A DNA stretch of 64,000 bases from Podarcis muralis (GCF_964188315.1 NC_135667.1:8432001-8496000), one strand, 5' to 3'; counted from the stretch's first letter, positions 8,101 through 37,739 are shown. Made by a program: numbers and translations. The notes: generated by a model not told the origin, from the sequence alone.

Positions 8101-9442
8101 TTACAAACTCATAAAGAGACTACAAACTCAAACAGACTAAAAACTCGAACACATGATATGCATAACACAATAATAACAGGATTAGAGATGAGAGTTTATG
8201 AATAGAGATAAGTTCATGTAAGTCCATAGTCAGATTCGACATGAAGGTCTTGGTTTGAATCATTGAGCAGAAGTCAGAAGTCAATTATGGATCAGAAACC
8301 AGGACACGGCACTGTTTCGATGTATTCACCTTCATCAGCTGGAAGTATCAAACATTTTTCTTGGTATGTTTAATAACAAGAACTCCAACTTATTTAAAAT
8401 TTTAATGTGGTGCATTGGTTTATGGTAAAATAATGAATTATATAATTAGCTGTGGACTCACTAAGAATTAGCAAGTGTATATGGAAGGCAAAAAAAGCTT
8501 ATGAATTGTCTTTGGAATTTGACCTATTTCTGTACTTCAGATCTGGATGACTGTTTCAGATGCCCAGAAGATCAATATCCCAACAAGAAGAGAAACCAAT
8601 GCATCTCCAAAACTATGAGCTTTCTTTCCTATGAAGAACCTTTTGGGATCAGCTTAGCTTCCATTGCTCTTTCTTTTTCCCTTCTCACAACTCTGGTGTT
8701 AGGCACTTTTGTGAAGCACAAAGATACTCCCATTGTCAAAGCCAACAACCGAGCCCTCACCTACACTCTCCTGGTCTCTCTTCTGCTCTGCTTCCTATCT
8801 TCTTTGCTGTTTATCGGCAAACCTGAGAAAGTGACTTGCCTTTTCAGGCAACCTGCTTTTGGCATGATCTTCTCTGTGGCTATTTCTTGCATGCTGGCCA
8901 AAACAATCACTGTAGTTGTAGCTTTCATGGCCACCAAGCCAGGCTCTAGCATGAGGAGGTGGGTAGGGCAAAGACTGGCCTACTCTGTTGTAGTTTCCTG
9001 TTCTTTTATTCAATATAATGTTTGTGTTCTGTGGTTGATGACATCACCCCCATTCCCCGATTTAGATATGCACTCTGTGACCACAGAAATCATTGTGCAA
9101 TGTAATGAAGGGTCTGTGACCCTGTTTTACTGTGTCCTGGGCTACATGGGCCTCCTGGCCATTGCCAGTTTCATTGTGGCATTTCTGGCCCGCAGATTAC
9201 CTGACAGTTTTAATGAAGCCAAATTCATTACCTTCAGCATGTTGCTGTTTTGCAGTGTTTGGCTTTCTTTTGTTCCAACTTACCTGAGCACCAAAGGGAA
9301 ATACATGGTAGTGGTGGAGATTATCTCCATCTTGGCCTCCAGTGCTGGGTTATTGGGCTGCATCTTCGCTCCAAAATGCTACATCATTGCCTTGAGGCCT
9401 GAGTTGAACAACAGAGAACAATTAATAAGGAGAAAGAATTAA
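1306..9442 (+). CDS. Vmn2r: V2R gene 1, complete six-exon vomeronasal type-2 receptor (~877 aa)
   Basis: Exons 1306-1520, 2516-2807, 4178-5047, 5379-5606, 6660-6786, 8541-9442; all GT-AG, phases compatible, total 2634 nt. Signal peptide, [31 protein letters not shown], Cys-rich domain (CNEHC..CCYDC..C) and 7TM with [12 protein letters not shown]. Symbol is family-level only. Confidence 0.95.
5937..6370 (+). mobile_element. Solo LTR in gene 1 intron 4
   Basis: TGTCAGG...CCTGACA inverted termini, 5-bp TSD CTATG (5932-5936, 6371-6375), AATAAA at 6285; absent at the paralogous site in copy 3 (about 21083). Confidence 0.8.
7038..7144 (+). mobile_element. RTE-BovB LINE 3' end
   Basis: GGGGTCACGAAGAGTCGGACACGACTAAACGACTAAACAACAAC tail; 12-bp TSD ATTATAACCTCA (7026-7037, 7145-7156); empty site in copy 3 intron 5. 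Confidence 0.85.
8299..8342 (-). ncRNA. Type I hammerhead ribozyme motif (Penelope-like element remnant)
   Basis: Minus strand reads CCAG CUGAUGA A GGUG AAUA CAUC GAAA CA GUGCCG UG UC CUGG: stem I CCAG/CUGG, canonical CUGAUGA and GAAA cores, GUC cleavage triplet. Confidence 0.7.
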
Positions 9443-11712
9443 ATAGAACCTTAGGGATTTTCCTTCATTGTCTTCTATATGTGAAGTGGAATTGTTTAAG
9501 ACCAAGGCCATTTTACCTACATCCTCTGCTAGAGATTCTGCTGTTATTCCAGTGCCAAACCAACAATTTCTGCATGTGAACCTATTTTCCAGTGACAGTC
9601 CCAGATTTACAGAAGATATCCCAGTTTCCAATGTAATCCCAGGATATCCCAGTTTTCCTTAGGATGTCCCTATTTTCATGGGAGAAATGTTGGAATGTAT
9701 GGAACAGGATTTTCTTATTTTCATCACAGAAATATTGAAGGGTATAATATAACTTACAAGAAACCCAGTGTAGGGCTGCACAATTTAGAGGAGGGTGGGT
9801 GGGAAGGAAGTATAGGTGTATTGAGGTAACTCTGTGTTGGTGCGAGAACACCACACAACTAAGGGAAAAGAGGCGTGAAAAGGGGGAATTGTACATGTTA
9901 GGAAAATGTGTTAGTGAAGCACTTAAAAGACAATGCAATGCAATACGCAGGGAATGTGCATATTATATCAGAGTAAAATGCAGTCCGTTTCCATATGTTT
10001 GCACCTACCACACCATTATAAAAGCTTATTGTCAGTAATGTTACGAGGCTATTATTGTATTGTAATTGATATTGTAATTGAAAACTAATAAAAATTATCA
10101 TTATAAAAATAGTAATAAAACCTTATTTTCCTTCTGCTATGGTTTGGACAGATCAGCAAACAGTAGTCCCGCTCCATAGCGTACTTTATCGCAATGTAAT
10201 CTAATTTTACAGTAGCTTCTTGTGTATCTGATTGGCCTGTAAGATCCTTCACCTTGATGACACAAGTGTATTCTGCTCTGAATTCATTCATACTCTTGAG
10301 AAATGGGAGCTGCCATTGCTTTGGTAAAACTGGGGTTTGGCAGCCGCCATCGGATGAGGCCGGAAACTGAATCCTAGTTTTTGTTTTTGTTTCCCTCATT
10401 TTTTCCACACTTACGTACTGCAGATTTCGTCCTGCCTATGCTTCAATAAATAAATGCCAGGAGGCCTTATCCAATAAGCCAGTTAGGGAAGAGCTGAATT
10501 GTCATGCAATCTGAGCATTTAACAGAAGAAATCAGGGTTCCCCCCCCCCAAATTATATTGTCTCTCCCCCCCCTCCCCATTTATTATTGCTGCTAATACT
10601 CTTCAATGGCTAGGGAACCATTGAGTTGTTCACTGTTGTAGAGTAAGAGAATTTGATGGATTCCCCAAAGAAATGAGGGATTTTTTCGCTGATCTGCATA
10701 GCTCTCCTGTTAAGGCTCTTGTCTCACTGTGTAATGGTGGGATTTACAGAGCCATTGAATCAATGGATTCTAAGTACCCTGAACATCACTGTGGAGCAGT
10801 ATTATTCCTAAAACTAACAATAGCCTCACCAGGCACAATTATTTTGGGATTTGTTCTGGACCGAATTGTATCGGCGTCAACTCAGGGCAGGTCTGTCTGA
10901 TTACCCGCCCTCCCCCAGCTGTTTGGGGGTGGTTTTGGCTGCAGGCAGTGCTACTAAATATCTTTCAGCACTGTAGAAGTTGTGCTGTGGGCTGCTCCAG
11001 AGGACCAATTTCCTAGTTTCCCTTGTGCTCATTATATGATGTGGTCTATGTCATTTGAGCATTAGGAAATTTGAGGCAAGGTGTCATCAGAAAACTGATC
11101 GTACTCAGCTCTGTTTTGCTGTAATATCTAAATCATTAAATTTAGAAATCCCTGCTTTGCAGTCAAAAAGTAAATAGCTTCAACATGACTTTCCAGTTTG
11201 CTTGCTCAGAAAAAAAATCCACTTTTGGGGCCACTAAGAGGCAGAGGCACTATGTAATCAGATTTGGATAAACAAATCGAACCCAACTTGTTGGTTACAA
11301 AAAGTGTGATTGAGGCAAAATACTCAGAAGATTATTATCTCTTCCAGCAATTATCCAAATAATTATATGTGGTTCACTTGGCCAAATCTTAACAGATTTT
11401 CTGATTGCACCTGAAAAGAGTCAAAATTTTAATGAGTGTTGACACTCTTATGCATATATCCAGGCATGCATTTATCAGGATTTGATTCTAATACGTAGCT
11501 GACAATTCACACTTTGAGATTTATCATTATTTTTATTTCCATTGTCAGGGATCATCAAATGCTGCCGACTCCTCCTAAAAGAAACCATGACAGCAAACAC
11601 AGAAAATATAAAACAACTGAAAACATCTAAAAATAATTTGAGTACAGATATAGACTGGGAAACATCTCTGCTTAAGAGATTTGTTGTAGGGGAGAAAGGT
11701 TACACCGGTAGG

Positions 11713-11927
11713 ATGTTGTGGCTATTGGTGTTGCTGTTCCTGAAAATGCCTGTTGTGTGTAGAGCAGATAATATCCGGTATCCAATGAAAGACCCTTTTC
11801 CTGTTCCTCATGAGTGGTACCAGCAAGGGGACTTCATCATAGATGGGATTTCTTCTCAAATCCTTCACATATTCTCTGAAGTTTTCTTCAGAGAACACCC
11901 TTCACAGAATCTGTTCGATGTTTCATA
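11713..11927 (+). CDS. Vmn2r: V2R exon 1 of copy 2 (own exons 2-5 deleted; candidate first exon of a chimeric gene)
   Basis: ATG 11713, MLWLLVLLFL signal peptide, HEWYQQGDFIIDGI, phase-2 donor TA|GTAAG at 11927/8; 215 bp as in gene 1; upstream 10430-11710 is paralogous to the gene 1 upstream region. Confidence 0.85.
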
Positions 11928-12817
11928 GTAAGTGTTTCCATCCTATCCAACAAATCTCTTTCCTTTTCTGTAATCTCCTTAAGATTGAAAGCTTGATGGT
12001 TGAGACTGTACACTGACACTTATAAGCTGCTGAGCTAGATTTTGAATTGTACATTTCTGCTTCTTTTATTTTTATATTTTATTTAATATATTTCATTTGG
12101 AATGGCATGGAAAGCTAAGGAAATTCAATAAAACACATAGAACATAAAAACTAAATAATTCAATTAAATACTGATTAAAAGAAGCAGAAATGTTTAATGT
12201 AAATGTCCTGCAAACTATTTGACTCCCTTGACCCCTGGATTAAAATTGTTCATAAAAATAATGTCTCCAAAAATATGTTGCAGTTACGTGTACATAAAAC
12301 ACATGTATTAATTAAAATATATCATGCTAGAGAATATTGCAAAAAACACAAAACAACCTCAAAAGAGGTATTTACAGGAATCAGTATATTAGGCAAGATT
12401 TCATATAGCAAGTATCCATTGGTCTGATGTGAAAATGTAAAGAACTGAATCTAAGATTGGAAATATAAACATGAAATATGAACACGATAACACGGAATTG
12501 GTAGAATTGCCCATATGGAGCCACTGAACTTCAACACATCTATGTATATCCATCCACTCAGAGAAAAGTCCTATTGAATTCAGTTCAGGCTATACATGGT
12601 AAACAAGTATAGCAAAAAGACATTTTTTAGTCGGAAAGCACTTCATGAGATATTTGAAGTATTCAGCTACCTAAAGAGAAGGATTTTTTCTTTTTCTTTT
12701 TTCTTTTTTCAACTAGAGCAAAGTTTCAGAAAGGGATGAAAGGTGGGTGTGTCAAAGAACCACACAGAACACAGATGCCCCGATGAGTCATACACTTTCA
12801 TCAACTGTGTGTTGTCT

Positions 12818-13033
12818 AAACAAAAAAAAATTCCTTCCAGTAGCACCTTAAAGACCAACTAAGTTAGTTCTTGGTATGAGCTTTCGTGTGCATGCACACT
12901 TCTTCAGATACACAGAAGTGTGCATGCACACGAAAGCTCATACCAAGAACTAACTTAGTTGGTCTTTAAGGTGCTACTGGAAGGAATTTTTTTTTGTTTT
13001 GACTATGGCAGACCAACACGGCTACCCATCTGT
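12818..13033. mobile_element. Penelope-like element remnant forming a perfect 86-bp inverted repeat
   Basis: Arms 12818-12903 and 12914-12999 are exact reverse complements around a 10-nt loop; 15-bp TSD AACTGTGTGTTGTCT (12803-12817, 13034-13048); single-copy empty site in gene 1 (about 2353-2367). The PLE assignment rests on recalled similarity to squamate PLE termini and on the hammerhead motif. Confidence 0.8.
12874..12911 (-). ncRNA. Minimal type I hammerhead ribozyme motif (PLE-type)
   Basis: Minus strand reads GUAU CUGAAGA A GUGUGC AU GCACAC GAAA GC UC AUAC: stem I GUAU/AUAC, CUGANGA core, palindromic stem II, GAAA, minimal stem III. Confidence 0.65.
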
Positions 13034-13103
13034 AACTGTGTGTTGTCTGTTAGCTGAGAAACATGTATTACAAAAGGGATAACTTCATTTCAATAAAAAC
13101 CAT

Positions 13104-13332
13104 ATGAGCCAAATTCATTACCTTCAGGATGTTGCTGTTTTGCAGTGTTTGGCTTTCTTTTGTTCCAACCTATCTGAGCACCAAAAGTAAATACGTGGTG
13201 GTGGTGAAGATCATCTCCATCTTGGCCTCCAGTGCTGGGTTATTGGGCTGCATCTTTGCTCCTAAATGCTACATCATTGTCTTGAAGCCTGAGTTGAACC
13301 ACAGAGAACAACTAATAAAGAGAAAGAATTAA
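13104..13332 (+). pseudogene. 3' fragment of V2R exon 6 (TM6-TM7 and tail) fused to intron 1 sequence
   Basis: ORF 13129-13332 [19 protein letters not shown]...[21 protein letters not shown] matches the end of gene 1 exon 6; sequence just upstream matches gene 1 intron 1 (about 2340-2421); downstream 13333-14340 matches the gene 1 3' flank. Confidence 0.9.
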
Positions 13333-14340
13333 ATAGAACCTTAAGGATTTTCCTTCATTGTATTCTATACTTGAAGTGGTAGTGGTAAGTCCAAGGACAT
13401 TTTAAGTACAGCCTCCTCTAGAGATTCTGCTGTTATTCCAATACCAAACCAAAGTCATATTACAGACGCTCCAAGTGTCCCTATTTTCCAGGGACAATCT
13501 CAGATTTACAGAATGTATCCTAGTTTATGATGTGATCCTGGGATATCCCAGTTTTGCTTAGGATGTCCCAGTTTTCATTGGAGAAATGTAGAAAAGTATG
13601 GAATAGGATGTCCTTCTTTTCATCACAGAAATGTTGGAGGGTGTGATATAACTTAGAAGAAGACCATTGCAGGACTGCACAACCTAGAGGAGGGTGGTCG
13701 TACAGGTGAGCTGAGGTAGCTCTGAGTTGGTACCAGAAAACCACACAAGTAAGGGGAAAGGGCATGACAAGGGGGATGTTAGGAAGATGTGTTAGTAAAG
13801 CTCTTGAATGACAATGCAATGCATTGCACAGGGAATACACATACTGTATCAGAGTAGAATGCAGTCCGTTTCCATATGATTGTACCTACCACACCATTTT
13901 AAAGGTTTATTATTGGTGATGTTATAATGAGGCTATTATTGTATTGTAATTGAAAAGTAATAAAAATTATCATTATAAAAAAATAATAATAAAACTTTAT
14001 TTTCCTTCTGCTATGGTTTGGACAGTTCAGCAAACAGTAGTCCCATTCCATCATGTACTTTATTTATGTAATTTAATTTTACACTTGATTCTTGAGTATC
14101 TGATTGACCTGTAAGACCCTTTTCCTTGATGGCACAAGTGTATTCTGCTCTGAATTCATTCATACTCCTGAATAATGGAAACTTCACATTGCTTTTGTAA
14201 AACTGTTTTGCAGCCACCATTGTTTTGCAGCCACCATTGATGAGGTTGGAAATTGTATCCTGGTTTTTGCTTTTGCTTCCCTCATTTTTTCCACCTTTAC
14301 GTACTGCAAATTTCATCCTGCCTATGCTTCATTCAAAAAT

Positions 14341-15417
14341 GACCGCTCCCCGCTTAAAACGGGGGGCGGCCTTTGCGTGGACGCGTGCAGCCCCTAGATC
14401 TGGAGCGGCTCCAACAGCATAGGCTTGGCCTTGCCTTCCCTCAGGTGGGATACCTGGAGGTCTCCGCCTACCTCAGTCATTTGCCCAATCCCACCTGGGG
14501 GAAGCGTTGCCAAGGAGACCAGGCCAGGTAGGGGAGGGACTACCTGCCCACACAATAGAGGGAGGATCTTACCTGGGAATCCTCACTCGGCGAAAATGAC
14601 TTGGTCATGCGTAAAAGCTTAATTCTGATCAAAACAGCGATCGCAGACCTGGAAAGCGTACACGCCACTCACCCCAGTATTACGATTTTCTGGTCCGAAC
14701 TTCTGCCACGCTTGCATTGGCGTGGCAACATCAAACCCACCAGACTTAACTACACTGTGGAAAAAATCAATAGGGCAGTGCGCTCTGCAACCACTCACAT
14801 GGGAGGTTGGGTCGTGAAACACCCCAACATTAAAGTTTACATGCAGGAGCTATTTCGGCCCGATGGCGTGCACCTATCGGACCTTGGTAACGAGCGTTGG
14901 CTGAGCGACATCAGGCATGGCCTGATTGACTGGTTGGAGGATGGCAAAGGCGCTTTTCAGATGTAGGTAGTCTTGGCGGCGAGACCGCAATCTTTGCGGT
15001 CTCGGGTGGCGGTATCAGGCCTTGGGCGGAATCCTTTAGTCCATCTTCCTCTTTGCGGCGGCGATACCAGGGTTCCCCGTTAAAGGGGTTTCTGAAGGGA
15101 GGCTTTGGCCGTGTGCCGAAAGGTTGTCATTGCTCTCCCCTGCGGCAGCGGCGTAACGGGGGCGGCTATCTCTGCTTGAACATATGTTCTCCAGAGCCGG
15201 CCCATCCCCCCCCACACACTGTATAACCCTGATGCTCCCTAGGTCCCCGGCTGGGGACTGGGGAGGGAGAACACCCAATGCCTGAGCCAAGGTCTACCCA
15301 CATTTGAAATTTAATAAAGTTGTGGCCAATTTAATCCCATAGCACATTGTCTCGAGTCATTATTCCACATGACGGGGGGACCGCGGGGGATCTGGGGACT
15401 CTGCCTGTCCACGCAAT
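14341..15417 (+). mobile_element. GC-rich insertion encoding a degenerate SGNH hydrolase; DIRS/Ngaro-like tyrosine-recombinase retrotransposon fragment
   Basis: ORF 14601-14966 with FRPDGVHLSDLG (SGNH block V DxxH), preceded in frame by LGENDL (block III GxND, 14586-14603); AAT at both junctions against the empty site at 106-118; AATAAA near 15314. Confidence 0.6.
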
Positions 15418-15618
15418 AAAAGCCACTAGGCCTTCTCCAATTCAATCAAATACATACAACATACCAACAAAATAATTCAATTAAGTAGTGATAAAAATAA
15501 TCACAGATATTTAATGTGAATGTCCTGTGAACCACTTGACTGAATTTATGGACCCCTTGAAACCTGGACTAAAATGCTCCAGAAAAATAATGTTTCCAAA
15601 AATATGTTGCAGTTAGGT

Positions 15619-15968
15619 AAAGGTAAAGGTACCCCTGCCCGCACGGGCCAGTCTTGACAGACTCTAGGGTTGTGCGCCCATCTCACTCAAGAGGCCGGGG
15701 GCCAGCGCTGTCCGGAGACACTTCCGGGTCACGTGGCCAGCGTGACATCGCTGCTCTGGCGAGCCAGAGCCGCACACAGAAACGCCGTTTACCTTCCCGC
15801 TAGTAAGCGGTCCCTATTTATCTACTTGCACCCGGGGGTGCTTTCGAACTGCTAGGTTGGCAGGCGCTGGGACCGAGCAACGGGAGCACACCCTGCCGTG
15901 GGGATTCGAACCGCCGACCTTTCAATCGGCAAGCCCTAGGCTTTTACCCACAGCGCCACCCGCATCCC
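15619..15968 (-). mobile_element. Sauria SINE (young subfamily)
   Basis: (ACCTTT)n tail and tRNA-like head on the minus strand; 16-bp TSD TATGTTGCAGTTAGGT; empty site near 12275. Confidence 0.92.
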
Positions 15969-16652
15969 TATGTTGCAGTTAGGTGTACATAAAACACATG
16001 TATTAATCACAATACCTTATGCTAGAGAATATTGCAAAAAACACACAACAACCTCAAAAGAGGTATTTACAAGAATCAGTATATTAGGCAACATTTCATA
16101 TAGCAAGTGTCCACTGGGCTGATCTGGAAATGTGAAGAACTGAATCTAAGATTGGAAATATAAACACGATAAGATGAAATTGGCAGAATCGCCCATACGG
16201 AGCCAGTGAGCATCAACACATCTATGTATATCCATCCAATCAAAGAAAAGTCCCATTGAATTCAGTTGAGGTTATACAAGGTAAACGATTATAGCAAAAG
16301 ACATTTATGAGTCGGAAAGCACTTCATGAGATATGTGAACTATTCAGCTACCTAAAGAGAAGGATGAGAGAAATATTTTTTTTAATTAAAAAAATCAACT
16401 GAGCTGCAAATGTTGAGGAAGGGATGAAAAGCAGGTGTGTCAAAGAACCATGCAGAACACAGATGCCCATGTGAATCATACATTTTCATCACCTATGTGT
16501 TGTCTCTTAGCTTAGAAACATGAATTACAAAAGGCATAATTTCATTTCAATAAAAATCATTGTAGACGAGCACGGTCAAAATTGTGGAATGTTGATTTTA
16601 TGCACTACAGAATTCGACTCTGGAATTGTATATTAATTTACTTCATTTGCAG

Positions 16653-19600
16653 CATGGTGACAAAATTCTACCAGCACATACTTGCCTTGGCATTTGCTGT
16701 GAAAGAGATCAATGAGAACCCCACAATCTTGCCCAATATCACTCTTGGGTTCCACATCTACGATAGCTATCATGATGCAAGGATGACATATCGTAGCACC
16801 TTAGACCTGCTCTTCAAATCACAGAGATTTGTCCCCAACTATAAATGTGACACCCAGAAAAACCTCATGGCCATCGTTGGGGGACTTAGCTCTGATACAT
16901 CCTTCCATATCAGAGACAATATAGACCTCTACAAGATTCCACAGGTAGGATTTCTGAAGAGCAGAAGCAGCATACTGATTTCTAGGAGCTGAATTTTGGC
17001 ATTTTCTATTGAATTTATAAAACTTTTTAAAAATATGTAACAAGTAGGATGAATATACAGTGGGAAGGAAGGGCTAGCACAAGATACCTAGCAGTTAGTT
17101 CTAGCACTGAAAAACTGAGATAGCAGTGCTATGAACCAACTACAAATGAAACAGAAAAGTATTTCATATAATAGCATGGAAAATTGACCAAGCCAATAGA
17201 AAGCAGTATAATAACTTCTAGGGTGAATAGACTCCTGATCTTGTTTGTGGAGCTGAATTTTGACAATGTTCTATATAAAGGTAAAGGTACCCCTGCCCGT
17301 ACGGGCCAGTCTTGCCAGACTCTAGGGTTGTGCGCCCATCTCACTTAAGAGGCCAGGGGCCAGCGCTGTCTGCAGACACTTCCGGGTCACGTGGCCAGCG
17401 TGACAAGCTGCATCTGGCGAGCCAGCGCAGCACACGGAACGCCGTTTACCTTCCCGCTAGTAAGCGGTCCCTATTTATCTACTTGCACCTGAAGGTGCTT
17501 TCGAACTGCTAGGTTGGCAGGCGCTGGGACCGAGCGACGGGAGCGCACCCCGCCGCGGGGATTCGAACCACCGACCTTTCGATTGGCAAGTCCTAGGCGC
17601 TGAGGCTTTAACCCACAGCGCCACCCGCGTCCCAATGTTCTATATAAAACATTGATATTAAATATTTAACCAGTAGGATGACTATACAGTGGGAAGGAAA
17701 GGCTAGCACAAGATACCTAGCAGTTAGTTCCAGCGCTGAAAAACTGAGATAGCAGTGCAATGAACAAACTGCAAATGAAAATAAAATACAATAAAGTATT
17801 TCAAAATCATTCTCCGAGGTTAATAACATGGAAAATTGACCAAGCTGGAAGAAAACAGTGTCATCATTATTTCAAAATCCCTCTCCACAAGAACAATAAT
17901 TTGAATGATGTTGTTTGTGATATTACTGCCTTCCATTAGAAGCAAATATCTGTTTCTCTATAAGCAAAGGCCCGCTACGCTTCCTCCCTCTCTCCTTGCC
18001 CTTGCTATTTTGCCTTGTATTTTCCAACTCTACAATTCTATGATTTGGACTACCAGCCATTATTAATCCATTAAATTGAAACTTTCTCCCCAAGTGCCCC
18101 ATTGTAAGATTATAGATTTAGAATTCCCATAACTTTTTTTAAAAGGTGTACCTTGCCAGTTTGTTTAGTGGGTGATGCCTAAGAAAAGTCATTATCTGTG
18201 CCAGCCCTTAAAATATGGGATTCTCTGCAGGGTAATGTCTAGTGCCTTCATTGTATAGTTTTTGTCGCGTGCTCTTTAAATATGCACTTCTTCAACTTGA
18301 AATTTCACATTATATTTACATTTTAGGACCAACCTTACTCTCTTGATTGCCATTCATTCATTTTATTTGTCTGTTGCTTCTACACACAGAGAGACACATA
18401 CAATGCTCAAAGTGGAATGCCACAAAGCAACACGCTAGCATTTCAAACAAACACTACAAAAGCAATTCCATAATTCCATAACAAAACAATAAAAACAACA
18501 ATTTCATAGTAACACAGAAAAAGAATAGTGACGGTTATTGGCATCTGTCTTTCTTGCGAGACAATGGAGTTTGCCTCCAGGGGTGAAGTCAAACCTCTGA
18601 AGAATTATTTTGTTATTTTGGCTGCACTAGCAACACTGAAGTAACCTCCCCAGGGCACAAGCCTGGGCAGTGTGTATGGATGTCCAGTCCTACTCTGCCC
18701 AGATGAGAAGACCTCTCAGCCTTGCTGATATGGTCCAAAGGAAAACAGAGCAATACATTTGGCACCAGCTTGGCCACAGAAGTTGCAAGAAGAAAGGCAT
18801 ACAAGATGCCATTCAACTGTCTTAGGGACTTGACTCCAGATTTGTGAACAGTTTATTCCTTAACCTTCCCTTCTCCTGAAGTCATACCAAACAGCCCTAT
18901 TCCAATACACATACCAAATTACTTAATATGAAGCACCCAATAGCAAAAAGAAGGGGGCTTCACAATTTCACCTTTGTCTTAGAAATAACCCTCCTTTAAT
19001 GATGCTTACACACCTTCACCTTAAAAAGCTTTTTATGAGGCTTCCAAGGGAAAAGATAAGGGTAACTGGAAACCCCTGCCATGATGCTGCTCTTTTTTCT
19101 ATTGTATGTTAAATTATTGTAAGCATCCTCAACACCTGTTGTTGAAGAGCAGGTTGGAAATAAAATGATTGCATTAATCATCACAAGATTCAGAAAGTGT
19201 CTATAAGCAAAACTTAAATAAGAGAGGCATATTCCTAGAAAAGGTCTACTATGATTGATGAAAGTTTTCTTTGAATCATGAAAATATCTCAGTAATTGTA
19301 GAAAATTAACTGAAGTCGTTGCTCATAATGTGTTTCAGTATCTGTGCATTTTTATGTAGCTCACTTATGGCTCATTTCCCATGGAGGAGGAGAGTGATGA
19401 AATTCATGTCTCTTCCTTTTACCGCATGGTTCCAAATGAAGCCCACCAGTACATGGGAATTATCAGCTTGCTTAAGCATTTTGGATGGATATGGGTTGGA
19501 ATCTTTGTTGTGGATGATGAAAGTGGAGCAAATTTCTTGCAGACTATGGAACCATTGCTTTCCAAAAATGGAATCTGTTCAGCCTTCACACAAAGGCTCC

Positions 19601-22600
19601 CAAAACTAGCTCGTTTTGATAACCTTGATGACGTTTATGGTGTATTATTCAGAGGCTACAAGGATGTCAAAGATGACAAAGCCCAAACATTTATCATCTA
19701 TGGAGAATCTATGGCACTCATATGGCTGACAGCTATTTTCCTTGTACAGGATAATAAAAATAATGATATTTCATCAGTGACAAAAGTTTGGATCATAACA
19801 AGTCAGATTGATTTCATGTTGACCGGGCTTCAAAGGAGTTGGCCTCTTGTTCTCTTCCAAGGTGCCGTTTGCTTCACGATTCACACAAAAGAGCTTCTGG
19901 GGTTCCATCAGTTTCTTCAAAGCATAAAGACTGATGGGATAAAAGGAAATGGTTTTCTGAAGGACTTCTGGGAGCAAGCATTTGACTGTGATTTTTCAAA
20001 CCCCAATGTGCCAATGGACACAAGTGAACAATGTACAGGAGAAGAGAGACTGGAGAGTCTCCCTGATCCACTCTTTGAAATGGGGATGACTGGCCACAGC
20101 TACAGTATATACAATGCTGTCCATGTGGTGGCTCATGCTCTACATGACATTTATTTAACAAGATCCAAACCCAGAGCAATGATGGGTCATAACATATTTG
20201 AACTTCATGATCTGAGACCTTGGCAGGTAATATGCTGAAAATAACTCAATATTGTCTTTTGCAATAAATAAAAAATAAAAATGTGTGAACTGCTACTCCA
20301 CATTTTATTTTTTATTTTTTACAAAGCTTTGTATATGTATGTTATGTATTGCTCATTCTGGCCTGGAAAGACATTGTGTCATCAATGTATAATGTAGGTT
20401 TTTATCTTCTATGTAAAATAGTTGATTTTTCACTTTTGGTCTTTCTTAGATAATGCTAACAAACACTAATAGTGAAATGTGTGTGTGTGTATCATGGCAT
20501 TCAAAATTCAAAATTTTCATTTCCCCCGCCCTTGTCTTTAATCTTTCAATCAGCTCCACCCTTTCCTTCATGGCATTTCCTTTAACAATTCAGCTGGAGA
20601 AACACTGTCCTTTACTACTAAAAAGGAAATAGGAGGTGGATTTGACACCATGAACATGGTCATATTCCCAAACAAGTCCTTCCTTCGAGTCAAAGTTGGC
20701 GAGGTGGATGATACTGCTCCTGAAGGAAAGAAATTCATCATTCATGAGGACATGATAATGTGGCACCCAGGTTTTAACCAGGTCGGAATCCTAACAGTGT
20801 TTCTTGGGTTTTGGGGGTCTGCTGTAACCTACAAAACTGTCCTGCCAGAAATTTTTGTTTATTTTTCTGCAAACCCTCTATCTTCCTATTGAAAACTTAA
20901 ATAGTGCTGCTGTCTAGCAGAATGAAAGCCTAGGCACAACAATGAGTTGAAAAGCAAAGTTATATTTTCTGCCATGTTATATGTGCCTTAGGCTCTTAAA
21001 GACCCAGATACCTAGCACAATGAAAGATTAATTGCATCACTGAACTATCAACAATCAGTGGCATATCTGTTGCAGATTAAAGCTATGCCTCATCTGAGGG
21101 ATCTCAATGAAATGTTATAGCAAGACAGCATTGAGTTATCTCTCTTTTCATTGTATAATTCTCAATTGAATAAAACCTTCCTTAACATGTGAACTCTCCT
21201 CTGCCAACCCTTGGCATCTCTAAATACGAATAGAAAACATTAAAAACAACTTTTGATAATGTTAAAAAGCAAGAGGACTTGGAGGTCAGACTGCAGATAA
21301 AGCTAGATTCCATGCAAAAATTCATTTTATAAGAAATTCAGTAAGAGAACTTCTCCAACCTGAAACTCCTTTCCTATTTGTGGATAGGTGATGCCCATTT
21401 CTGTGTGCAATGAGCACTGCCCCCCTGGTCATCAGAAGAAAAGGAAGGAAGGTGAAAAGTTTTGCTGCTATGATTGTGCTCCATGTCCAGAAGGCAAGAT
21501 TTCAGACCAGAATGGTACATGAGAAAGAAATCATTTTTATTTTAATGGCAAAGTATTTTTAATGGATATTGCCTAAGAGCTAATTACAAATGATTATTCA
21601 CTATGTTGTGCATGTAAATAAGTGATCCTGCTTGGTATGAATTGCAAATATATCACTGCTGACTTCCACTACTTGGAGAAGCTAATATTCCTTGTGCAAT
21701 GCAATCTGTATGGTTTGGTAGTAAGCCTCAATGAAGACCAAATTATTTAGCTGATCATATCCAAAAAAGTAGACATATAGAAACAGTTTAAGCAAGACTA
21801 TTATAACCTCAACAGTCAAGTGATAATGATTATAGAAATGATGATGGTGATGACTAATTCAATCTGGTCAGATGTGAGATCTAAACTTGATTATATGCCA
21901 CAGGTTCTGGATCTGATAGCTGTTTCACCTCAGTTCCTTCTGAAGCAGATGCCACATTAAGGGGGAGGGTTCCATATCAGCACAAATAATATTTAAGAGT
22001 CCAGGATAAGTCTTTGGCATATATGTGGAGAAAATAAAATTAATGTACTCAACAGAACTTTTTGACATTTATGAATGAGAAGATAAATTAGGTTAAGGAA
22101 CAAGAACAGCAAAATCTAACTTACAGAAGGATAATTTAGAAACCGTAGTGAAATCATAACTTCCTGGATCAGTAAGGGTAAGACTGGTAACCATGCAATG
22201 AACATCCCAAAGTTAGACCAATTAGATTCCCAAAGATGGGATAGCTATACTACATTTCCTTTGAAAAATACAAATGTATATTACATAATTGCCAATTCTC
22301 TTAAATCCTCAATGGTCAGAGAAACGCTATATTACTGTAACTTGACAAACCTCCTCCCACTAACAAAAACCTTCTTCATAAGACAGTATTGGTATACTTT
22401 ATTTTTGCATCACATCTTTTTCAGAATGGTATGTGATTGGTTCATATAGGATGCATAATTTCAAAGATACGGGATTATCTGTCAGTGTGATGCAGGAGTT
22501 GGGTCACATGGTACATTTTATTGTAGGTATGGATTGATTAATTCAATTTTTTAAAAATAATGCTGTGAAGTCAGTAATATCCTATTAATAATCTTAAATT

Positions 22601-23868
22601 CAGAAGAGATTGATGTTAGTTCAAGATAGGAAATGGTTGAGTGATGATATCTGATGTATCACTGAAGGACATAAAAAAAGCAAAAAGTTTCCTTTTACCC
22701 AGTTTGATGAATTTTAAAGTCGTGCATGGTAAAATAATGAATGATATAATTAGCTGTGGGGCCTCATCCATTATCTCTTCAATCTTCCTGAATTGTTGCA
22801 GCAGCAAGAATATATGGCACATAATGGTACTGATAATAATAATATTGAGCCTGGTGGTCTGTCAAAATACAATGTTACATTGACACCTACTCACTAAGAA
22901 TCAGCATGGAGGCAAAGAAAGAATATGAATTGTCTTTCGAATTTGACCTATTTCTATTTTTTTCAGACATGGATGACTGTTTCAGATGCCCAGAAGATCA
23001 ATATCCAAACAAAATGAAAAGCCAATGCATCTTCAAAACTCTGAGCTTTCTTTCCTATAAAGAACCTTTTGGGATCGGCTTAGCTTCCATTGCTCTTTCT
23101 TTTTCCCTTCTCACAACTCTGGTGTTAGGCACTTTTGTGAAACACAAAGATACCGCCATTGTCAAAGCCAACAACCAAGCCCTCACCTACACTCTCCTGG
23201 TCTCTCTTCTGCTTTGCTTCCTATCTTCTTTGTTGTTCCTCGGCAGACCTGGGAAAGTGACATGTATTCTCAGACAACCTGCTTTTGGCATGATATTCTC
23301 TATGGCTGTTTCTTGCATGTTGGCCAAAACAATCACTGTAGTTGTAGCTTTCATGGCCACCAAGCCAGGCTCTAGCATGAGGAAGTGGGTAGGGCAAAGA
23401 CTGACCTACTCTGTTGTAGTTTCCTGTTCTTTTATTCAATCTATTGTTTGTACTTTGTGGTTGATGACATCTCCCCCATTCCCTGATGTAGATATGCACG
23501 CTGTAACCACAGAAATCATTGTGCAATGTAATGAAGGGTCTGTGACCCTGTTTTACTGTGTCCTGGGCTACATGGGCCTTCTGGCTGTTGCCAGCTTCAT
23601 TGTGGCATTTCTGGCCCGCAGATTACCTGACAGTTTTAATGAAGCCAAATTCATTACCTTCAGCATGTTGCTCTTTTGCAGTGTTTGGCTTTCTTTTGTT
23701 CCAACTTACCTCAGCACCAAAGGGAAATACATGGTAGTGGTGGAGATCATCTCCATCTTGGCCTCCAGTGCTGGGATATTGGGCTGCATCTTTGCTCCTA
23801 AATGCTACATCATTGTCTTGAGGCCAAAGCTGAACAACAGAGAGCACCTAATAAGGAGAACGCATTAA
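16653..23868 (+). CDS. Vmn2r: V2R copy 3, exons 2-6 intact, own exon 1 deleted
   Basis: Exons 16653-16944, 19360-20226, 20554-20781, 21388-21514, 22967-23868; open frames, GT-AG. No exon 1 between 15440 and 16653; the nearest exon 1 is 11713-11927, which is phase-compatible (2631 nt total). Confidence 0.9.
17280..17633 (-). mobile_element. Sauria SINE (young subfamily)
   Basis: Full length, head GGGACGCGGGTGGCGCTGTGGG on the minus strand; 15-bp TSD AATGTTCTATATAAA. Confidence 0.92.
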
Positions 23869-26001: not shown

Positions 26002-26614
26002 ATGTGGTGGCTATTGGTCTTTCTGTTTCTGTTGTTTCCTACTATGGGAAAAGTAGATACTATGAAGTGCCCCATTCAAAATCCATTTCCAATTCCACAC
26101 GAGTGGTATCAGCCAGGTGACTTCATTATTGGTGGGATTGCCTCTCAGATCTGTTATACTTTCTATGAAGAGTTCTTCAAGGTTCACCCTTCAGAGAATA
26201 TGTTTGAACTTCCACAGTAAGGGTTTTCCCTCACCTTCTGTATCCTTCCAAATCCCCTTAACTTTTCCTTCAGGTCTTCTAGACTGTAAAGCCAGCGATA
26301 GGGAATTTCTTATCACTGACACCTAAGAGCTGGTGTAGGAAACTTTGTTTTTCTCTAAAGAAGAAGAAGAAGAAAAGTTTGGATTTGATATCCTGCTTTA
26401 TCACTTCCCGAAGGAGTCTCAAAGCGGCTAACATTCTCCTTTCCCTTCCTCCCTCACAATAAACACTCTGTGAGGTGAGTGGGGCTGAGAGACTTCAAAG
26501 AAGTGTGACTAGCCCAAGGTCACCCAGCAGCTGCATGTGGAGAAGCGGAGACACAAACCCAGTTCCCCAGATTACGAGCCTACCGCTCTTAACCACTACA
26601 CCACACTGGCTATT

Positions 26615-26669
<55 letters not shown>

Positions 26670-29600
26670 CTTCCATTAGAAGAATGAATCTCAATTTCAT
26701 AATTGGTTGCAGACCAATTGTGATAATGAACCAAAATTTTCTCACAGTAGTTCTAGCTGCCTTTTTGATTAGTGAAGATGAAAAAAAAAAATTATCTGAC
26801 AGTAAGCACCATTGAACTCAATGGGATGACCCTTCTGCTACAGTCTACTACGTGATAAGTCCCTTTGAATTCATTGAGACTTACATCCAGATTAAGCATA
26901 TATAGAACTGCAGCTTTTATCGGCCGGAACACACCTCCTTTGTGATCACCTACTAAAAGAGAAAAGGGATGCGGGTGGTGCTGTGGTCTAAACCACAGAG
27001 CCTAGGGCTTGCTGATCAGAAGGTCGGCAGTTCGAATCCCCGCGACGGGGTGAGCTCCCGTTGCTCGGTCCCTGCTCCTGCCCACCTAGCAGTTCAAAAT
27101 CACATCAAAGTGCATGTAGATAAATAGGTACCAGCAGGAAGGCAAATGATGTTTCCGTGCACTGCTCCGGTTCGCTCAGTCATGCTGGCCACATGACCCG
27201 GAAGCTGTAGGCCGGCTCCCTCGGCCAGTAAAGTGAGATGAGTGCGGCAACCCCAAAGTCGTCCACAACTGGTCCTAACGGTCAGGGGTCCCTTTACCTT
27301 TACTAAAAGAGAAAGCATTATTATTATTTTTAATCAAATGAGTTTTATAGGTCAATCAAGAGATTAACAGCAGGTGTGTCAGAATACTGTACAGTATACA
27401 ACTGTCCTGATGAAACATACATTTTCTAATGACTGTTATTCCATAGCTAAGAAAAAACATATACAATAATATTATTTCAATCTGAATTAGTTTGAGATAG
27501 AACTGACTCCTATTGTTGTAGGTTGACATGTATAATACAGTTCCCATCTGAAATTTTCAAAAAATTCACTTTATGTGCAGTATGATGACAAAATTCTACC
27601 AGCATGTCCTTGCCTTAGCATTTGCTGTAGAAGAGGTAAACGAGAACCCCAAGATATTGCCCAATATCACTCTTGGGTTCCATATCTATGACAGCTATTT
27701 TGATGCAAAGATGACCTATCGTACCACACTTGACTTGCTCTTCAAATCACATCGTTTCATCCTGAACTACAAATGTGACACTCAGAAAAACCTCATAGCC
27801 ATCATCGGGGGACTTAGCTATGACACTTCTTTCCATATGGCTGACACCATATCCCTCTACAAGATTCCACAGGTGGGGTTTGTGAATGTGGTGATATGTT
27901 AATTTCCACAATCTACACTTCTCCTGTTCCTTTATGAGTCCATTTATGTGTCCCATTCATTTATGAGTCCAATGCAAGATGCTCATATTAGTGTCTAAGG
28001 CCTGGACATTTTTTAGCCCTAAAGAACACAAAATGCCCTTTTGATAGTTCCCATTTTACTAGAAAATTTTACTAGAAAGGTTGCTGAATTTAACTCACAC
28101 AGAAACTACCAATTGCTTCAACTATTTGTTGAATAAACAAGCATATACTCAAATAGAATTCTTCTGGTTTCCTTCTGTAATATGAGTACAATTTCCTTTA
28201 GCTCACTTATGGTTCATTTCCCACTGAGGAGGACAGTGATACAAGTCGCATCCCTTCCTTCTACCGCACAGTGCCTAATGAAGCCCACCAATACATGGGG
28301 ATTATCAACCTGCTTAAGTATTTTGGGTGGACATGGGTTGGACTCTTTGTTGTGGATGATGAGAGCGGACAAAATTTCTTGCAGACTATGGAACCTTTGC
28401 TTTCCCAAAATGGAATGTGTTCAGCCTTCACACAAAGTCTCCCAAAATTACCCCATTTTGATATGTGGAATGAATTGTGTGATTCATTGTCGAGTCATTA
28501 TACAGATCTTACTGATGACAAGGCCAATACAATCATCATCTATGGAGAATCTATGGCAACTATATGGCTGACAGCTAATGTCATTCTGCGAGATCCTGAA
28601 AATGTGAACAGATCATCACTTAGAAAGGTTTGGATCATAACAAGTCAGGTAGATTTCATATTGTTGGGGGTTCAAAGGACCTGGGATCTTGATCTCTTCC
28701 AAGGTGCCATTTGCTTCACAATTCACTCAAAAACAATTATAGGGTTCAAGGAATTTCTTCAGAGCATAAAAATGGATGGTAGAGACGGAGATGGTTTTCT
28801 GAAGGACTTCTGGGAGCAAGCATTTGACTGTACTTTTCCAAACCCCAGTGTCCTCGTGGACATCAGTGAACAATGTACTGGAGAGGAAAACCTGGAAAGC
28901 CTTCCAGATCCAATTTTTGAAAGGCGCATGACTGGTCACAGCTACAGTATCTACAATGCTGTGCATGTGGTGGCTCATGCTTTACATGACATTTATTTAA
29001 CTAGGTCCAGGCACAGAACAAGGAGGGGTCATAAAATGTTCAAACTTCCAGAACTTCAGGCTTGGCAGGTAATGTATTTTTTAAAAAATAGAACATTGTG
29101 TCCATTAGTATAATATAAGACAATTTCCAGGTTCTCATCTGGAATTGTACGTTTTATTCACTGAAAGCATCTTGCACATCCCCCCCCCCATGTTGATCTT
29201 TATTATTGTTAAAAATATACATTTATACAACATTTATACAAGACTCTCTGTTTTTGTTTGTAACAAAAAGAAGCAAAAATACCTTGTACACCTAACAATA
29301 CACATAACAATACAATTTATGAAGAAGAAGAAAAGAGACAAAAGAAAAGAAAGGAAAGGAAAAGGAGAATATGTATATGTTTGTGTGTGTGTATGTGTGT
29401 GTGTGTGTGTGTGTGTGTAGGCAGTTGAGGTTTTAAAAAGACTTCCAAACATTCTCATTGTACATTATCTGTTTTCATTTTTTTCATTACATTTCTGATT
29501 TTTTGTGAAGTTATTGGAATAACTAACTCCTTAATTTTTTCTTTTATATTGGCAACTATTTGATGTCTTTTTAGATATTGTTCTATATCATCTTTATTTT

Positions 29601-32263
29601 CTTCCTTTTTCTTATATAACTCTTCAAAATATTTCACACATTCCTGCATTATTGTCTTTGGGTCGTCTATAATTTTTTCTCCTATTTTTAGCCTATTTAT
29701 CAATTTTTCATGTTTCGTTTTCTTTATTTTCCAAGCCAAATATTTGCTGGGTTTATTAGAAAATTATTTTGATTCCAAATTTTTAAATTCCAATCCATTT
29801 CCTGTTCAACTTTTGTTTTGTATTCCAATTTTAATAATTTAATTTCCGTTTTTATATTTTCCTTTTTTGGATTTTTTAAAAATTCCTTTTCCTTTTTTTA
29901 AAAAAATCATTCAATATTCTATTTTCCCCCTCACCTTTTTCTTTTCTTCGTATAGCATTTTTTTTATGAACTATCCTCTGATGACTGCTTTACTAGTATC
30001 CCAAATTATTCATGATTCTGTATCTTTTTATTAAATTTAAATAATTCTTGCAAAGTTTCTTTTGCATCTTCTAGTATCTTCTCATCATACAATAGTGAGT
30101 TGTTCAAATTCCATCTTCTTATTCCTACTTGCCACTCTAGTTTTAATTGAAGTAAAATCAGATTGTGGTCCGAAATTGTGTTTGGTAGGATCTGTGTCTC
30201 ATTTATTCTCCCCAATAAATCTGTAGATAGCCATTTGGCATCAATCCTACTTGAAATTGTTTTGGTTCTAAGAAATAGGTGTAATCTATTTTTAACTCAT
30301 GTTTGAACCTCCAGGAGTCTTTTAGATCCAAACTTTCCACCAATTTAAAGAACTTAGCGGGTAGTGAAAACATATTGCATATTATGGAGTTAATATTGTT
30401 ACAGAACTGGGGTGGGGGTCCAACTATTAATAAATGCTAGGATTTGAGTTTTTTTGTAATATGATGAGAGACTGAGGGTGTAAATAGGAGAATAAACCAC
30501 ATTTCTTGAAGCACAACAGACATTGCTGAGTCTTCTGTTCTCCAAAGAGACACAGACCCTGTGTGGGCACCTGAGATCCCATGTGCTTTTGCCACAGCTT
30601 GGCAGAGAGACAGGTGCCGGGCTTCTGTAACAATATCAACTATAGCAGAATTGCTGATTTTTCACTCTTGGTTATTGAGAAACAATACTAGTAAACAATA
30701 CTAGAAAAGAACTGTGTTTCAAAATCATGGCATTATGTGCAAAATCTGCATTGCTTCCTCTCATTTCGTCTTTTTATCCTTCAATTAGCTTCACCCTTTT
30801 CTTGGTGATATTTCCTTTAACAACTCAGCTGGAGAATCCATGACCTTCACTGCTAAAAGGGAAATGGAAGGTGGATTTGACATCATGAACATGGTCACAT
30901 TCCCAAACAGGTCTTTCCTCCGAATCAGAGTTGGGCAGGTGGATGACAATGCTCATGAAGGAAAGAAATTCATCATTCATGAGGACATGATCATGTGGCA
31001 CAAAGGTTTTAACCAGGTCCAGATCCTTCATCATTCTTGTTACCCCCTGCATTAGCTACATAGATGTAGCCTGGCAGAAGAATCACTTCTTTTCTACATA
31101 CAATCTGTCTTTTTTGGACAGGGTCATGGGAATAATGCGGCCATCTACCACATTGAAGGATTAGGTGCAACAATGAACTGTAAAAAAATAAAAAGAAAAG
31201 AACCCAATGCTATATTTTATGTAGTTGTTATCTGCACCTCATTTATATATGGCATTTCAAAATGTATTTGTGAGGCAGTAGTGGGTAGTCTCTATTTGCA
31301 TTGCATAAGTGGCAAATCATCCCACCCCCGCAAATTTAAATGCCACGTATAAAAAGTCTTTAAAAAAATGAAGAAAGAAAATAAGAAAATGAGAAAGGGG
31401 AACGGGGTATAGTAAATCACTATAACAATTGTTTACAGTTAACTATTGCATTTTTTAAGCTAGTGTATTTTGTATAAATGAGTTCCAAGTTTAATTACAG
31501 ATGTCTATTTAAAGTCGACATCTAGAAACAATCCACTCATACATGGTAGGCATAGTTAGGTCTTCAGTCCATTTAATAAATGGAGTCGTACATTAATCTT
31601 TCCAATGCAGCAATATCAGTCTTTCGGCCATAGGAAGGGTAAGGATAACCCATTCATGTTGTCTAGTTGTCAAATTCTATACACTATGTATGAAGTTAGT
31701 TCAAAATAATAGTATTCTCTGGTTTTTATTGTTATTTTTTCACAATTACATTATATAATCCAGTACTTTCTCCTAAAATCTATTAATTATAGGACATTGT
31801 AAAACCATGTGTTTTAAAGAAGCGTTATCCTTATTACACAAAATGCTGTCTTAGACAATATTTTTCTACACAAACATAAAGACAATTCAGTGTGGGAATA
31901 GGGGTCAAATATTTTTCTGGTTTGACATTGCATTACATAACTTTCTCACTGACATAATTGTTTCCAGAGATACCAGTGTTCTGGTGTATTTTGATCCTAA
32001 TACTGCCCATCAAACAGAAAAGCCTCAACTCAGACTCCTTTCTTGTATATGGATAGGTGACTCCTATTTCTCTTTGCAATGAGCACTGCCTCCCTGGTTA
32101 TCAGAAGAAAAGGAAGGAAGGCGAAAAATTTTGCTGTTATGATTGTGCCGCATGTCCAGAAGGCAAGATTTCAAACCAAAATGGTATATGACAATGAAAT
32201 CATATTTTCTTTTTGTTAGAAAGTGTTAATATGGCTTGTTTTCTAATACTGTATTTACAAATG

Positions 32264-32315
<52 letters not shown>

Positions 32316-37697: not shown

Positions 37698-37739
<42 letters not shown>

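What the first reader, a model, noticed from the sequence alone, without database searches (positions are those of the whole stretch)
11713..23868. Two reciprocally deleted V2R copies could splice into one full-length chimeric receptor
Seen: copy 2 keeps promoter and exon 1 but jumps from intron 1 into the end of exon 6 (about 13103). Copy 3 has lost promoter and exon 1 (junction about 15440) but keeps exons 2-6 with open frames and all GT-AG sites. Exon 1 ends in phase 2 (TA|) and exon 2 starts with C, giving TAC and a 2631-nt ORF (876 aa), the same size as intact neighbours. The new 4.7-kb intron would contain a dead 3' end, a retro-insertion, a palindrome and a SINE. Inference: gene birth by fusion of two half-genes. 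Counter-evidence: this exon 1 has changes at otherwise conserved residues (C>Y in RYPM, P>Q and G>D in QQGDFIIDG), and the copy 2 3' flank inside the intron has AATAAA motifs that could end transcription early.
Basis: partly seen in the sequence, partly recalled or inferred. Interest (0 to 1): 0.72.

Follow-up and report, generated by a model that had tools for sequence, protein, structure and literature searches.

The report
Lizard scent-receptor gene with rearranged intron
A wall-lizard vomeronasal receptor gene has its first exon 4.7 kb from the other five because a copied piece of the neighbouring gene's end sits in its first intron; the reading frame is whole, but whether it is still expressed could not be tested here.

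Summary
Exon 1 (11713-11927, phase 2, GTAAGT donor) and exons 2-6 (16653-23868) are open, have AG/GT sites and sum to 2631 nt (876 codons). The three odd exon-1 residues and the AATAAA motifs are real.

- "Copy 2" is a mosaic. Its intron 1 is closest to copy 3, but its exon-6 tail and 3' flank are closest to gene A.
- A 3.9-kb duplication straddling the A/B intergenic region (S1 9214-13103, S2 13104-16569) explains this.
- The proximal promoter and exon 1 were then either deleted (1.65 kb) or never copied.
- So exon 1 and exons 2-6 belong to one gene lineage. This is not a fusion of two half-genes.

Exons 2-6 are under purifying selection (omega 0.34, same as gene A). Exon 1 shows raised omega, and G44D occurs in 0 of 94 squamate V2Rs.

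The window is Podarcis muralis. The RefSeq model P0120 starts at exon 2, which is a common annotation habit.

I put the chance of a working receptor at about 0.5. The scan had not noted this structure elsewhere.

The parts
9214..13103 (+). Segment S1. It holds the last 227 nt of gene A exon 6, A's 3' flank, the tandem-unit boundary (10434), gene B's upstream region, exon 1, and intron 1 up to 84 nt before exon 2.
   Evidence: Colinear with S2. K between S1 and S2 is 0.075 (tail), 0.174 (flank) and 0.162 (intron 1).
10434..11712 (+). Upstream (promoter) region of gene B. It is homologous to 91-1305, upstream of gene A.
   Evidence: K is 0.145 distal and 0.254 in the last 220 nt. There is an 85-nt indel at 11494-11578.
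11713..11927 (+). Exon 1: 71 codons plus TA, hydrophobic N-terminus, donor GTAAGT. It carries Y23, Q38 and D44.
11928..16652 (+). Proposed intron 1, 4725 nt.
   Evidence: Sum of the parts below. The normal intron 1 in gene A is about 1 kb (1521-2515).
12818..13033 (.). Palindromic repeat insertion (arms 12814-13003) with a 15-nt target duplication, present in S1 only.
Evidence: No Rfam family reached threshold.
13104..13333 (+). Dead copy of gene A's exon-6 tail (TM7 plus C-terminus, 74 open codons). No acceptor site precedes it.
   Evidence: 3 synonymous and 8 nonsynonymous changes, four of them at invariant TM7 residues.
13334..14352 (+). Copy of gene A's 3' flank. Its AATAAA pair at 13959/13988 matches A's at 10087/10114.
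14353..15410 (+). GC-rich repeat insertion with a remnant of a GDSL/SGNH-esterase-like ORF (14601-14966).
   Evidence: Pfam E = 0.04, below cut-off; look-alikes are short hypothetical proteins of many animal phyla.
15411..15441 (+). First ~30 nt of the tandem unit (matching 10440-10466), then the jump into intron 1 (matching 12113).
15442..16569 (+). Second copy of intron 1 (matching 12113-13103), interrupted by a SINE at 15618-15968.
16653..16944 (+). Exon 2. The in-frame ATG at 16654 is where RefSeq model P0120 starts.
19360..20226 (+). Exon 3 (ANF_receptor).
20554..20781 (+). Exon 4.
21388..21514 (+). Exon 5 (NCD3G).
22967..23868 (+). Exon 6 (complete 7tm_3, stop at 23866-23868).
   Evidence: 285 bits, profile positions 1-251 of 251.

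Best explanation
This is one V2R gene ('gene B', the Podarcis muralis gene behind RefSeq protein P0120), not two half-genes.

History. A roughly 3.9-kb stretch was copied in tandem by non-homologous joining. It reached from the last 227 nt of the upstream neighbour (gene A), through the intergenic DNA and gene B's promoter and exon 1, into gene B's intron 1. The proximal copy of the promoter, exon 1 and the first 185 nt of intron 1 is absent. Either a later 1.65-kb deletion removed it, or a second template switch in the same event never copied it.

Result. Gene B keeps a single promoter and exon 1 (11713-11927). Its intron 1 grew from about 1 kb to 4.7 kb. The intron now holds a dead copy of gene A's 3' end with its poly(A) signals, and three repeat insertions came later.

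Expected working (inferred, not shown). Transcription starts upstream of 11713. The exon-1 donor pairs with the exon-2 acceptor at 16652/16653, because no exon-like acceptor lies in between. An 876-residue receptor results. Some transcripts probably end early at the intronic poly(A) signals near 13.96-13.99 kb.

Shown: the anatomy, the mosaic relationships, and purifying selection on exons 2-6.

Inferred: the splice, the promoter activity, and the tolerance of the G44D change.
For: Mosaic kinship.
- Intron 1: K is 0.162 for c2-c3, against 0.208 and 0.244 to A.
- Flank: K is 0.138 and 0.249 for A-c2, against 0.276-0.394 to c3. The A and c2 flanks align colinearly over 1 kb at 80%, while the c3 flank aligns only in short bits.
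- The two duplicated parts have equal ages, 0.162 and 0.174.

Junctions. Both are non-homologous with 2-3 nt of microhomology. About 30 nt of the unit start are preserved at 15411-15441.

Exon 1 belongs to the B lineage. It shares D27, H52 and S55 with the Zootoca vivipara protein P0133. P0133's exons 2-6 are the closest foreign relatives of exons 2-6 here, at 89-93%.

Selection on exons 2-6. Omega is 0.34 (95% interval 0.22-0.55). Omega = 1 is rejected at p = 3e-5. It does not differ from gene A or from background (p = 0.82 and 0.97). dS to A (0.15-0.25) is close to intron K, so recent gene conversion is unlikely.

Intactness. Under neutrality, exons 2-6 would stay intact with P < 0.1 once K exceeds about 0.01-0.013, compared with about 0.06-0.10 per lineage since the duplication.

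Domains. Pfam finds ANF_receptor, NCD3G and a full 7tm_3.
Against: No transcript evidence could be obtained.

Exon 1 evolves differently from the rest of the gene.
- It has 5 synonymous and 11 nonsynonymous changes on its branch.
- Omega is above the family background of 0.26 (LRT p = 0.044 and 0.071; lower bound about 0.33).
- G44D is seen in 0 of 94 squamate V2R exon 1s, and C23Y in 2 of 67.

The proximal 220 nt upstream of the ATG are not conserved with gene A (K 0.254, with an 85-nt indel).

The intron holds A's conserved AATAAA pair and possible cryptic acceptors inside the tail copy.

RefSeq does not join exon 1 to exon 2. However, 28 of 89 comparable models also start at exon 2.

No close Podarcis raffonei protein was found; the best is 86%.

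The three-sequence topologies rest on distances without an outgroup.
Confidence: 0.6

Rival explanations
1. Recently orphaned pseudogene. Exons 2-6 lost their own proximal promoter and exon 1 through a young 1.65-kb deletion. The distal exon 1 had long been a redundant, decaying twin. It is either not spliced productively, because transcripts end at the intronic poly(A) signals, or it yields a misfolding receptor because of G44D. Exons 2-6 only look healthy because too little time has passed.
For: Exon 1 has a raised omega and an unprecedented G>D in the near-invariant GG motif. The same segment's tail copy shows a clearly neutral pattern. The intactness of exons 2-6 still allows a neutral period of up to K of about 0.01-0.013. 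The omega interval allows up to about 30% of the branch to be neutral. There is no close annotated P. raffonei orthologue. A solo dead exon 1 at 34912-35106 shows that such relics occur in this array.
Against: There is no disabling change in 2416 nt or in any of the 9 splice sites. Omega for exons 2-6 equals that of the intact neighbour. The Zootoca orthologue's exon 1 has changed just as fast (6 against 4 lineage-specific residues in 47), including the conserved GD, so fast exon-1 evolution may be normal for this lineage. If the structure arose in one event, there never was a second exon 1.
Confidence: 0.3
2. Two complete tandem paralogues each suffered a deletion (copy 2 lost exons 2-6, copy 3 lost its promoter and exon 1). 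Their remnants now form a new chimeric gene.
For: The present anatomy is compatible with it. Intron 1 of copies 2 and 3 are each other's closest relatives.
Against: Copy 2's tail and flank should then be closest to copy 3's, but they are closest to gene A's, and copy 3's flank is barely alignable. The model needs three events where one or two suffice. It does not explain why the c2-c3 intron distance equals the c2-A flank distance.
Confidence: 0.1
3. The RefSeq reading. The product is the 804-residue protein P0120, which starts at the ATG at 16654, transcribed from a start site inside the intron (for example in the repeat insertion or the SINE).
For: P0120 equals exons 2-6 at 100% identity in the peptide comparison and begins at the first full codon of exon 2.
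Against: Such a protein lacks the signal peptide and the first strand of the ligand-binding domain. Starting at exon 2 is a frequent annotation habit (28 of 89 models), also seen in relatives whose exon 1 is intact. No promoter evidence exists.
Confidence: 0.05
4. Assembly artefact in a repetitive tandem array.
For: Tandem V2R arrays are hard to assemble.
Against: The duplicated parts differ by 14-17%. Each carries its own repeat insertions with target duplications. The junctions show microhomology. A mis-join of near-identical repeats would not look like this.
Confidence: 0.03

Closest known systems
[quoted passage not shown]
   Same: It has six coding exons with the family's phases and the ANF_receptor, NCD3G and 7tm_3 domains. 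It lies in a head-to-tail array with at least five paralogues in the window. It shows the birth-and-death dynamics known for the large lepidosaur V2R repertoire (PMC10869828, PMC3590772).
   Different: Intron 1 is 4.7 kb instead of about 1 kb, and it contains a copy of the neighbour's terminal-exon end and 3' flank. Exon 1 carries D at a Gly found in 92 of 94 relatives.
Chimeric genes born from partial duplicates (fusion of two parental genes)
   Same: A non-homologous duplication junction places parts of two neighbouring genes side by side.
   Different: The piece of the second gene (A's tail) is intronic and not part of the ORF. The coding exons all come from one gene lineage, and no new domain combination arises.
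Duplicated first exons upstream of shared exons, as in UGT1A and clustered protocadherins (from general knowledge, not tested here)
   Same: If the duplication first produced two promoter/exon-1 units upstream of one set of exons 2-6, the arrangement would be of this kind.
   Different: Only one exon 1 survives, so there is no alternative usage now.
Truncated or relic V2R fragments, such as the solo exon 1 at 34912-35106
   Same: These are leftovers of rearrangements in the same array. The exon-6 tail copy at 13104-13333 is such a relic.
   Different: Exons 2-6 here show neither disabling mutations nor relaxed selection.

Membership tests
V2R / class C GPCR | Venus-flytrap ligand-binding domain (Pfam ANF_receptor) | tested here: met
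   Exon 2 E = 2.6e-9 and exon 3 E = 7e-20. Together they cover profile positions 5-310 of 353.
V2R / class C GPCR | Cysteine-rich linker (NCD3G) | tested here: met
   Exon 5, 59 bits against a cut-off of 38.9.
V2R / class C GPCR | Complete seven-helix domain (7tm_3) | tested here: met
   Exon 6, 285 bits, profile positions 1-251 of 251.
V2R / class C GPCR | Six coding exons with conserved phases and GT-AG introns | tested here: met
   The boundaries are the same as in genes A, C, D and E.
V2R / class C GPCR | N-terminal exon with a signal-like start and the conserved GDxxxGG strand | tested here: inconclusive
   The exon is present and open, but G44 is D (G in 92 of 94 relatives, D in none), C23 is Y (2 of 67) and P38 is Q (7 of 94).
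V2R / class C GPCR | Expression in vomeronasal sensory neurons | not testable with these tools
Chimeric fusion gene from two half-genes | The 5' and 3' coding parts derive from two different parental genes | tested here: not met
   Intron 1 next to exon 1 is the closest relative of intron 1 next to exon 2. Exon 1 shares derived residues with the Zootoca orthologue of exons 2-6. The 'other gene' piece, A's tail, is intronic.
Chimeric fusion gene from two half-genes | A transcript that joins the parts | not testable with these tools
V2R pseudogene | Stop codon, frameshift or lost splice site | tested here: not met
   None is found in 2631 nt or in any splice dinucleotide.
V2R pseudogene | Relaxed selection on the coding sequence | tested here: inconclusive
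   Exons 2-6 have omega 0.34, clearly below 1. Exon 1 has an omega that is raised and compatible with 1.

The most novel reading that the evidence does not exclude
After a straddling duplication created two promoter/exon-1 units, the receptor lost its proximal one and has since lived on the distal twin, 4.7 kb away. It splices across a dead copy of its neighbour's terminal exon and poly(A) signals. It also tolerates an Asp at a Gly that is otherwise almost invariant in class C receptors. This would be a natural case of first-exon replacement, and of suppression of intronic poly(A) sites, in a chemoreceptor gene.
Probability: 0.3. Interest if true: 0.5.

Novelty: new member of a known kind. Interest (0 to 1): 0.3.

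Why it matters
V2R arrays evolve by rapid birth and death. This locus shows in detail how a non-homologous duplication across a gene boundary remodels a 5' end without breaking the reading frame.

It is also a warning for repertoire counts. Homology-based pipelines would call this gene 'complete', while RefSeq gives it an N-terminally truncated protein.

If the splice is real, the locus offers a natural test of two things: whether a terminal-exon remnant with poly(A) signals inside an intron is tolerated, and whether the invariant Gly of the first strand is needed. If the splice is not real, this is an ordinary, freshly disabled receptor.

Tried and rejected

All searches were done exon by exon, by reference, or with database proteins.

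4. Mapping G44 onto solved class C structures failed. Exon 1 alone gave only chance hits, and the HMMER alignment of P0133 to CaSR starts in exon 2. The equivalence with the GDxxxGG strand of CaSR and mGluR therefore rests on my own knowledge only.

5. Rfam found nothing above threshold in 10-26 kb.

6. Promoter conservation gave no signal. The distal upstream region has K 0.145 and the proximal 220 nt have K 0.254.

7. I first read the exon-6 tail states shared by copy 3 and Zootoca, but not by copy 2, as dating the c2/c3 split before speciation. I rejected this once the tail turned out to be a copy of gene A's tail.

8. I first thought the GC-rich insertion caused the 5' deletion. I rejected this because about 30 nt of unit start lie between the insertion and the junction.

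9. The large representative protein search and the structure prediction were not used, because they would not decide the question.
Full report
WHAT THE WINDOW IS

The window holds a head-to-tail array of V2R genes on the + strand:
- gene A (exon 1 about 1306-1520, stop at 9442);
- the locus in question (11713-23868);
- gene C (26002-34418);
- a solo dead exon 1 (34912-35106);
- gene D (37063-44560);
- gene E (48014-55573);
- the start of gene F (59414 onward).

The species is Podarcis muralis. [quoted passage not shown] Against the window DNA, exon 5 matches at 100%, and the exon 3 and exon 6 alignments read 99.7% only because each runs one or two residues past the exon. P0126 matches gene E at 99-100% in the same way.

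CHECK OF THE OBSERVATION

Exon 1 is 11713-11927 (215 nt) and ends TA| before GTAAGT. Exon 2 starts at 16653 with C after a good polypyrimidine-AG. The remaining exons are 16653-16944, 19360-20226, 20554-20781, 21388-21514 and 22967-23868. Each is open in its frame and bounded by AG and GT. The lengths sum to 2631 nt.

Pfam finds ANF_receptor in exons 2 and 3, NCD3G in exon 5 and a complete 7tm_3 in exon 6. It also finds the last 55 positions of 7tm_3 in the tail at 13108-13329.

The three odd residues in exon 1 are real. In 94-95 squamate V2Rs with an N-terminal exon-1 match:
- position 23 is C in 60 of 67 (Y in 2);
- position 38 is P in 70 of 94 (Q in 7);
- position 44 is G in 92 of 94 (D in none).

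AATAAA motifs lie at 13314, 13959 and 13988. The last two correspond to gene A's 10087/10114 and are probably the clade's real poly(A) signals.

That exon 1 fits exon 2 in frame needs no special explanation, because every exon 1 in the array ends in phase 2.

HISTORY

The relationships contradict this.
- In the shared part of intron 1 (692 columns) the closest pair is c2-c3. K2P is 0.162, against 0.208 for A-c3 and 0.244 for A-c2.
- In the 3' flank the closest pair is A-c2. The two flanks align colinearly over 1 kb (80%, K 0.174). Copy 3's flank aligns to either one only in two short pieces, where K is 0.138 and 0.249 for A-c2 against 0.276-0.394 for pairs with c3.
- In the 227-nt tail, A-c2 (0.075) is also closer than c2-c3 (0.099).

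'Copy 2' is thus a mosaic: its 5' part comes from the lineage of exons 2-6 and its 3' part from gene A.

The tandem unit boundary lies at 10434, which matches 91. A single tandem copy of the stretch 9214-13103 explains the layout. That stretch holds A's tail, A's flank, the unit boundary, gene B's upstream region, exon 1, and intron 1 up to 84 nt before exon 2. It reproduces junction 1 (13103/13104), the order of parts, and the equal ages of the two duplicated pieces (0.162 and 0.174).

In the second copy, the sequence jumps after about 30 nt of unit start (15411-15441, matching 10440-10466) into intron 1 at the position matching 12113, with AAT microhomology. This gap of about 1.65 kb would have held the proximal promoter, exon 1 and 185 nt of intron 1. 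It is either a later deletion or a second template switch in the same event. The present sequence cannot tell which.

Three insertions are private to one copy or the other, and two of them carry clear 15-nt target duplications:
- the palindromic repeat (12818-13033), with target duplication;
- the GC-rich insertion (14353-15410), which carries a weak GDSL-esterase-like ORF;
- the SINE (15618-15968), with target duplication.

Exon 1 shares D27, H52 and S55 with the Zootoca vivipara protein P0133. P0133's exons 2-6 are the nearest foreign relatives of exons 2-6 here (89-93%), and it shares the derived C-terminal states of copy 3. Exon 1 and exons 2-6 therefore belong to one gene lineage.

SELECTION

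I fitted a three-taxon codon likelihood model myself, treating the exons as separate partitions and dropping split codons.

For exons 2-6 on this gene's branch:
- omega is 0.34 (95% interval about 0.22-0.55);
- omega = 1 is rejected (p = 3e-5);
- there is no difference from gene A (0.375, p = 0.82) or from background (p = 0.97).

dS to gene A (0.15-0.25) matches the intron distance, so recent gene conversion is not what keeps the ORF clean.

I also simulated neutral substitutions. The locus's own ratio is 20 indel events per 257 substitutions, 14 of them not multiples of three. Combining the two shows that exons 2-6 and their splice sites would remain intact with probability below about 0.1 once K exceeds 0.01-0.013. 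The per-lineage divergence since the duplication is about 0.06-0.10.

So there are two possibilities. Either the exons have been expressed as a working gene for nearly all of that time, or they lost their first exon only recently.

Exon 1 behaves differently:
- it has 5 synonymous and 11 nonsynonymous changes on its branch, against 3 and 5 in gene A;
- its omega is above the family's exon-1 background of 0.26 (p = 0.044 with outgroup C, 0.071 with outgroup E), with a lower bound of about 0.33.

The dead tail copy shows the neutral pattern expected of it: 3 synonymous and 8 nonsynonymous changes, four at invariant TM7 residues.

Against reading exon 1 as decayed, the Zootoca orthologue's exon 1 has changed at least as much. 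It has 6 lineage-specific residues against 4 here, in 47 positions, and these include the conserved GD.

ANNOTATION

P0120 starts at the ATG at 16654, the first full codon of exon 2, so RefSeq does not use exon 1. This says little. Of 89 near-full-length squamate V2R models in which the exon-2 start could be located, 28 start there and 23 carry only part of exon 1.

No close P. raffonei protein turned up; the best is 86%. A P. muralis paralogue outside the window (P0229) is 92-97% identical in exons 3 and 6.

WHAT COULD NOT BE DONE

Neither the 11927|16653 junction nor the assembly junctions were tested.
- The joined 876-residue model was deliberately not searched or folded.

VERDICT

The anatomy is as described. 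The 'fusion of two half-genes' is better read as one gene whose intron 1 received a duplicated piece straddling the boundary with its neighbour. I give the one-gene history about 0.75.

I give a present-day working receptor about 0.5. The main alternative is a recently orphaned set of exons with a degenerating distal exon 1.

This is ordinary birth-and-death dynamics of a large chemoreceptor family (PMC10869828, PMC3590772) with an instructive structure, so interest is modest.

Noticed in passing
window 34912-35106: A solo exon-1 relic lies 500 nt after gene C's stop and 2 kb before gene D's real exon 1. It has an in-frame stop and its donor GT is changed to GA. Homology is limited to about 320 nt around the exon and is closest to gene E's exon 1 (78%).
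   Followed up: partly
window 14601-14966: A 121-codon ORF remnant with weak GDSL/SGNH-esterase similarity (Pfam E = 0.04, below cut-off) lies inside a 1.06-kb GC-rich insertion. Its atlas look-alikes are short hypothetical proteins from chordates, arthropods and molluscs, which suggests a widespread transposable-element ORF.
   Followed up: partly
window 12814-13003: A nearly perfect inverted repeat (190 nt, 95%) is flanked by a 15-nt target duplication. It is present in only one of the two intron-1 copies.
   Followed up: partly
window 15618-15968, 17276-17639, 43129-43486: The same SINE family occurs several times in V2R introns at 89-96% identity. The copy at 15618 has a 15-nt target duplication and postdates the duplication of intron 1.
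   Followed up: no
window 37063-37266 (gene D exon 1): Gene D's exon 1 lacks the segment that holds the conserved Cys (a 4-codon gap in the alignment) and has GA instead of GG, yet the gene is otherwise open. This shows that exon 1 is the least constrained exon of the family.
   Followed up: no
proteins P0120, P0123 and others: About a third of automated squamate V2R models start at the Met at the first codon of exon 2 and so lack the signal peptide. This is a systematic annotation shortfall.
   Followed up: partly
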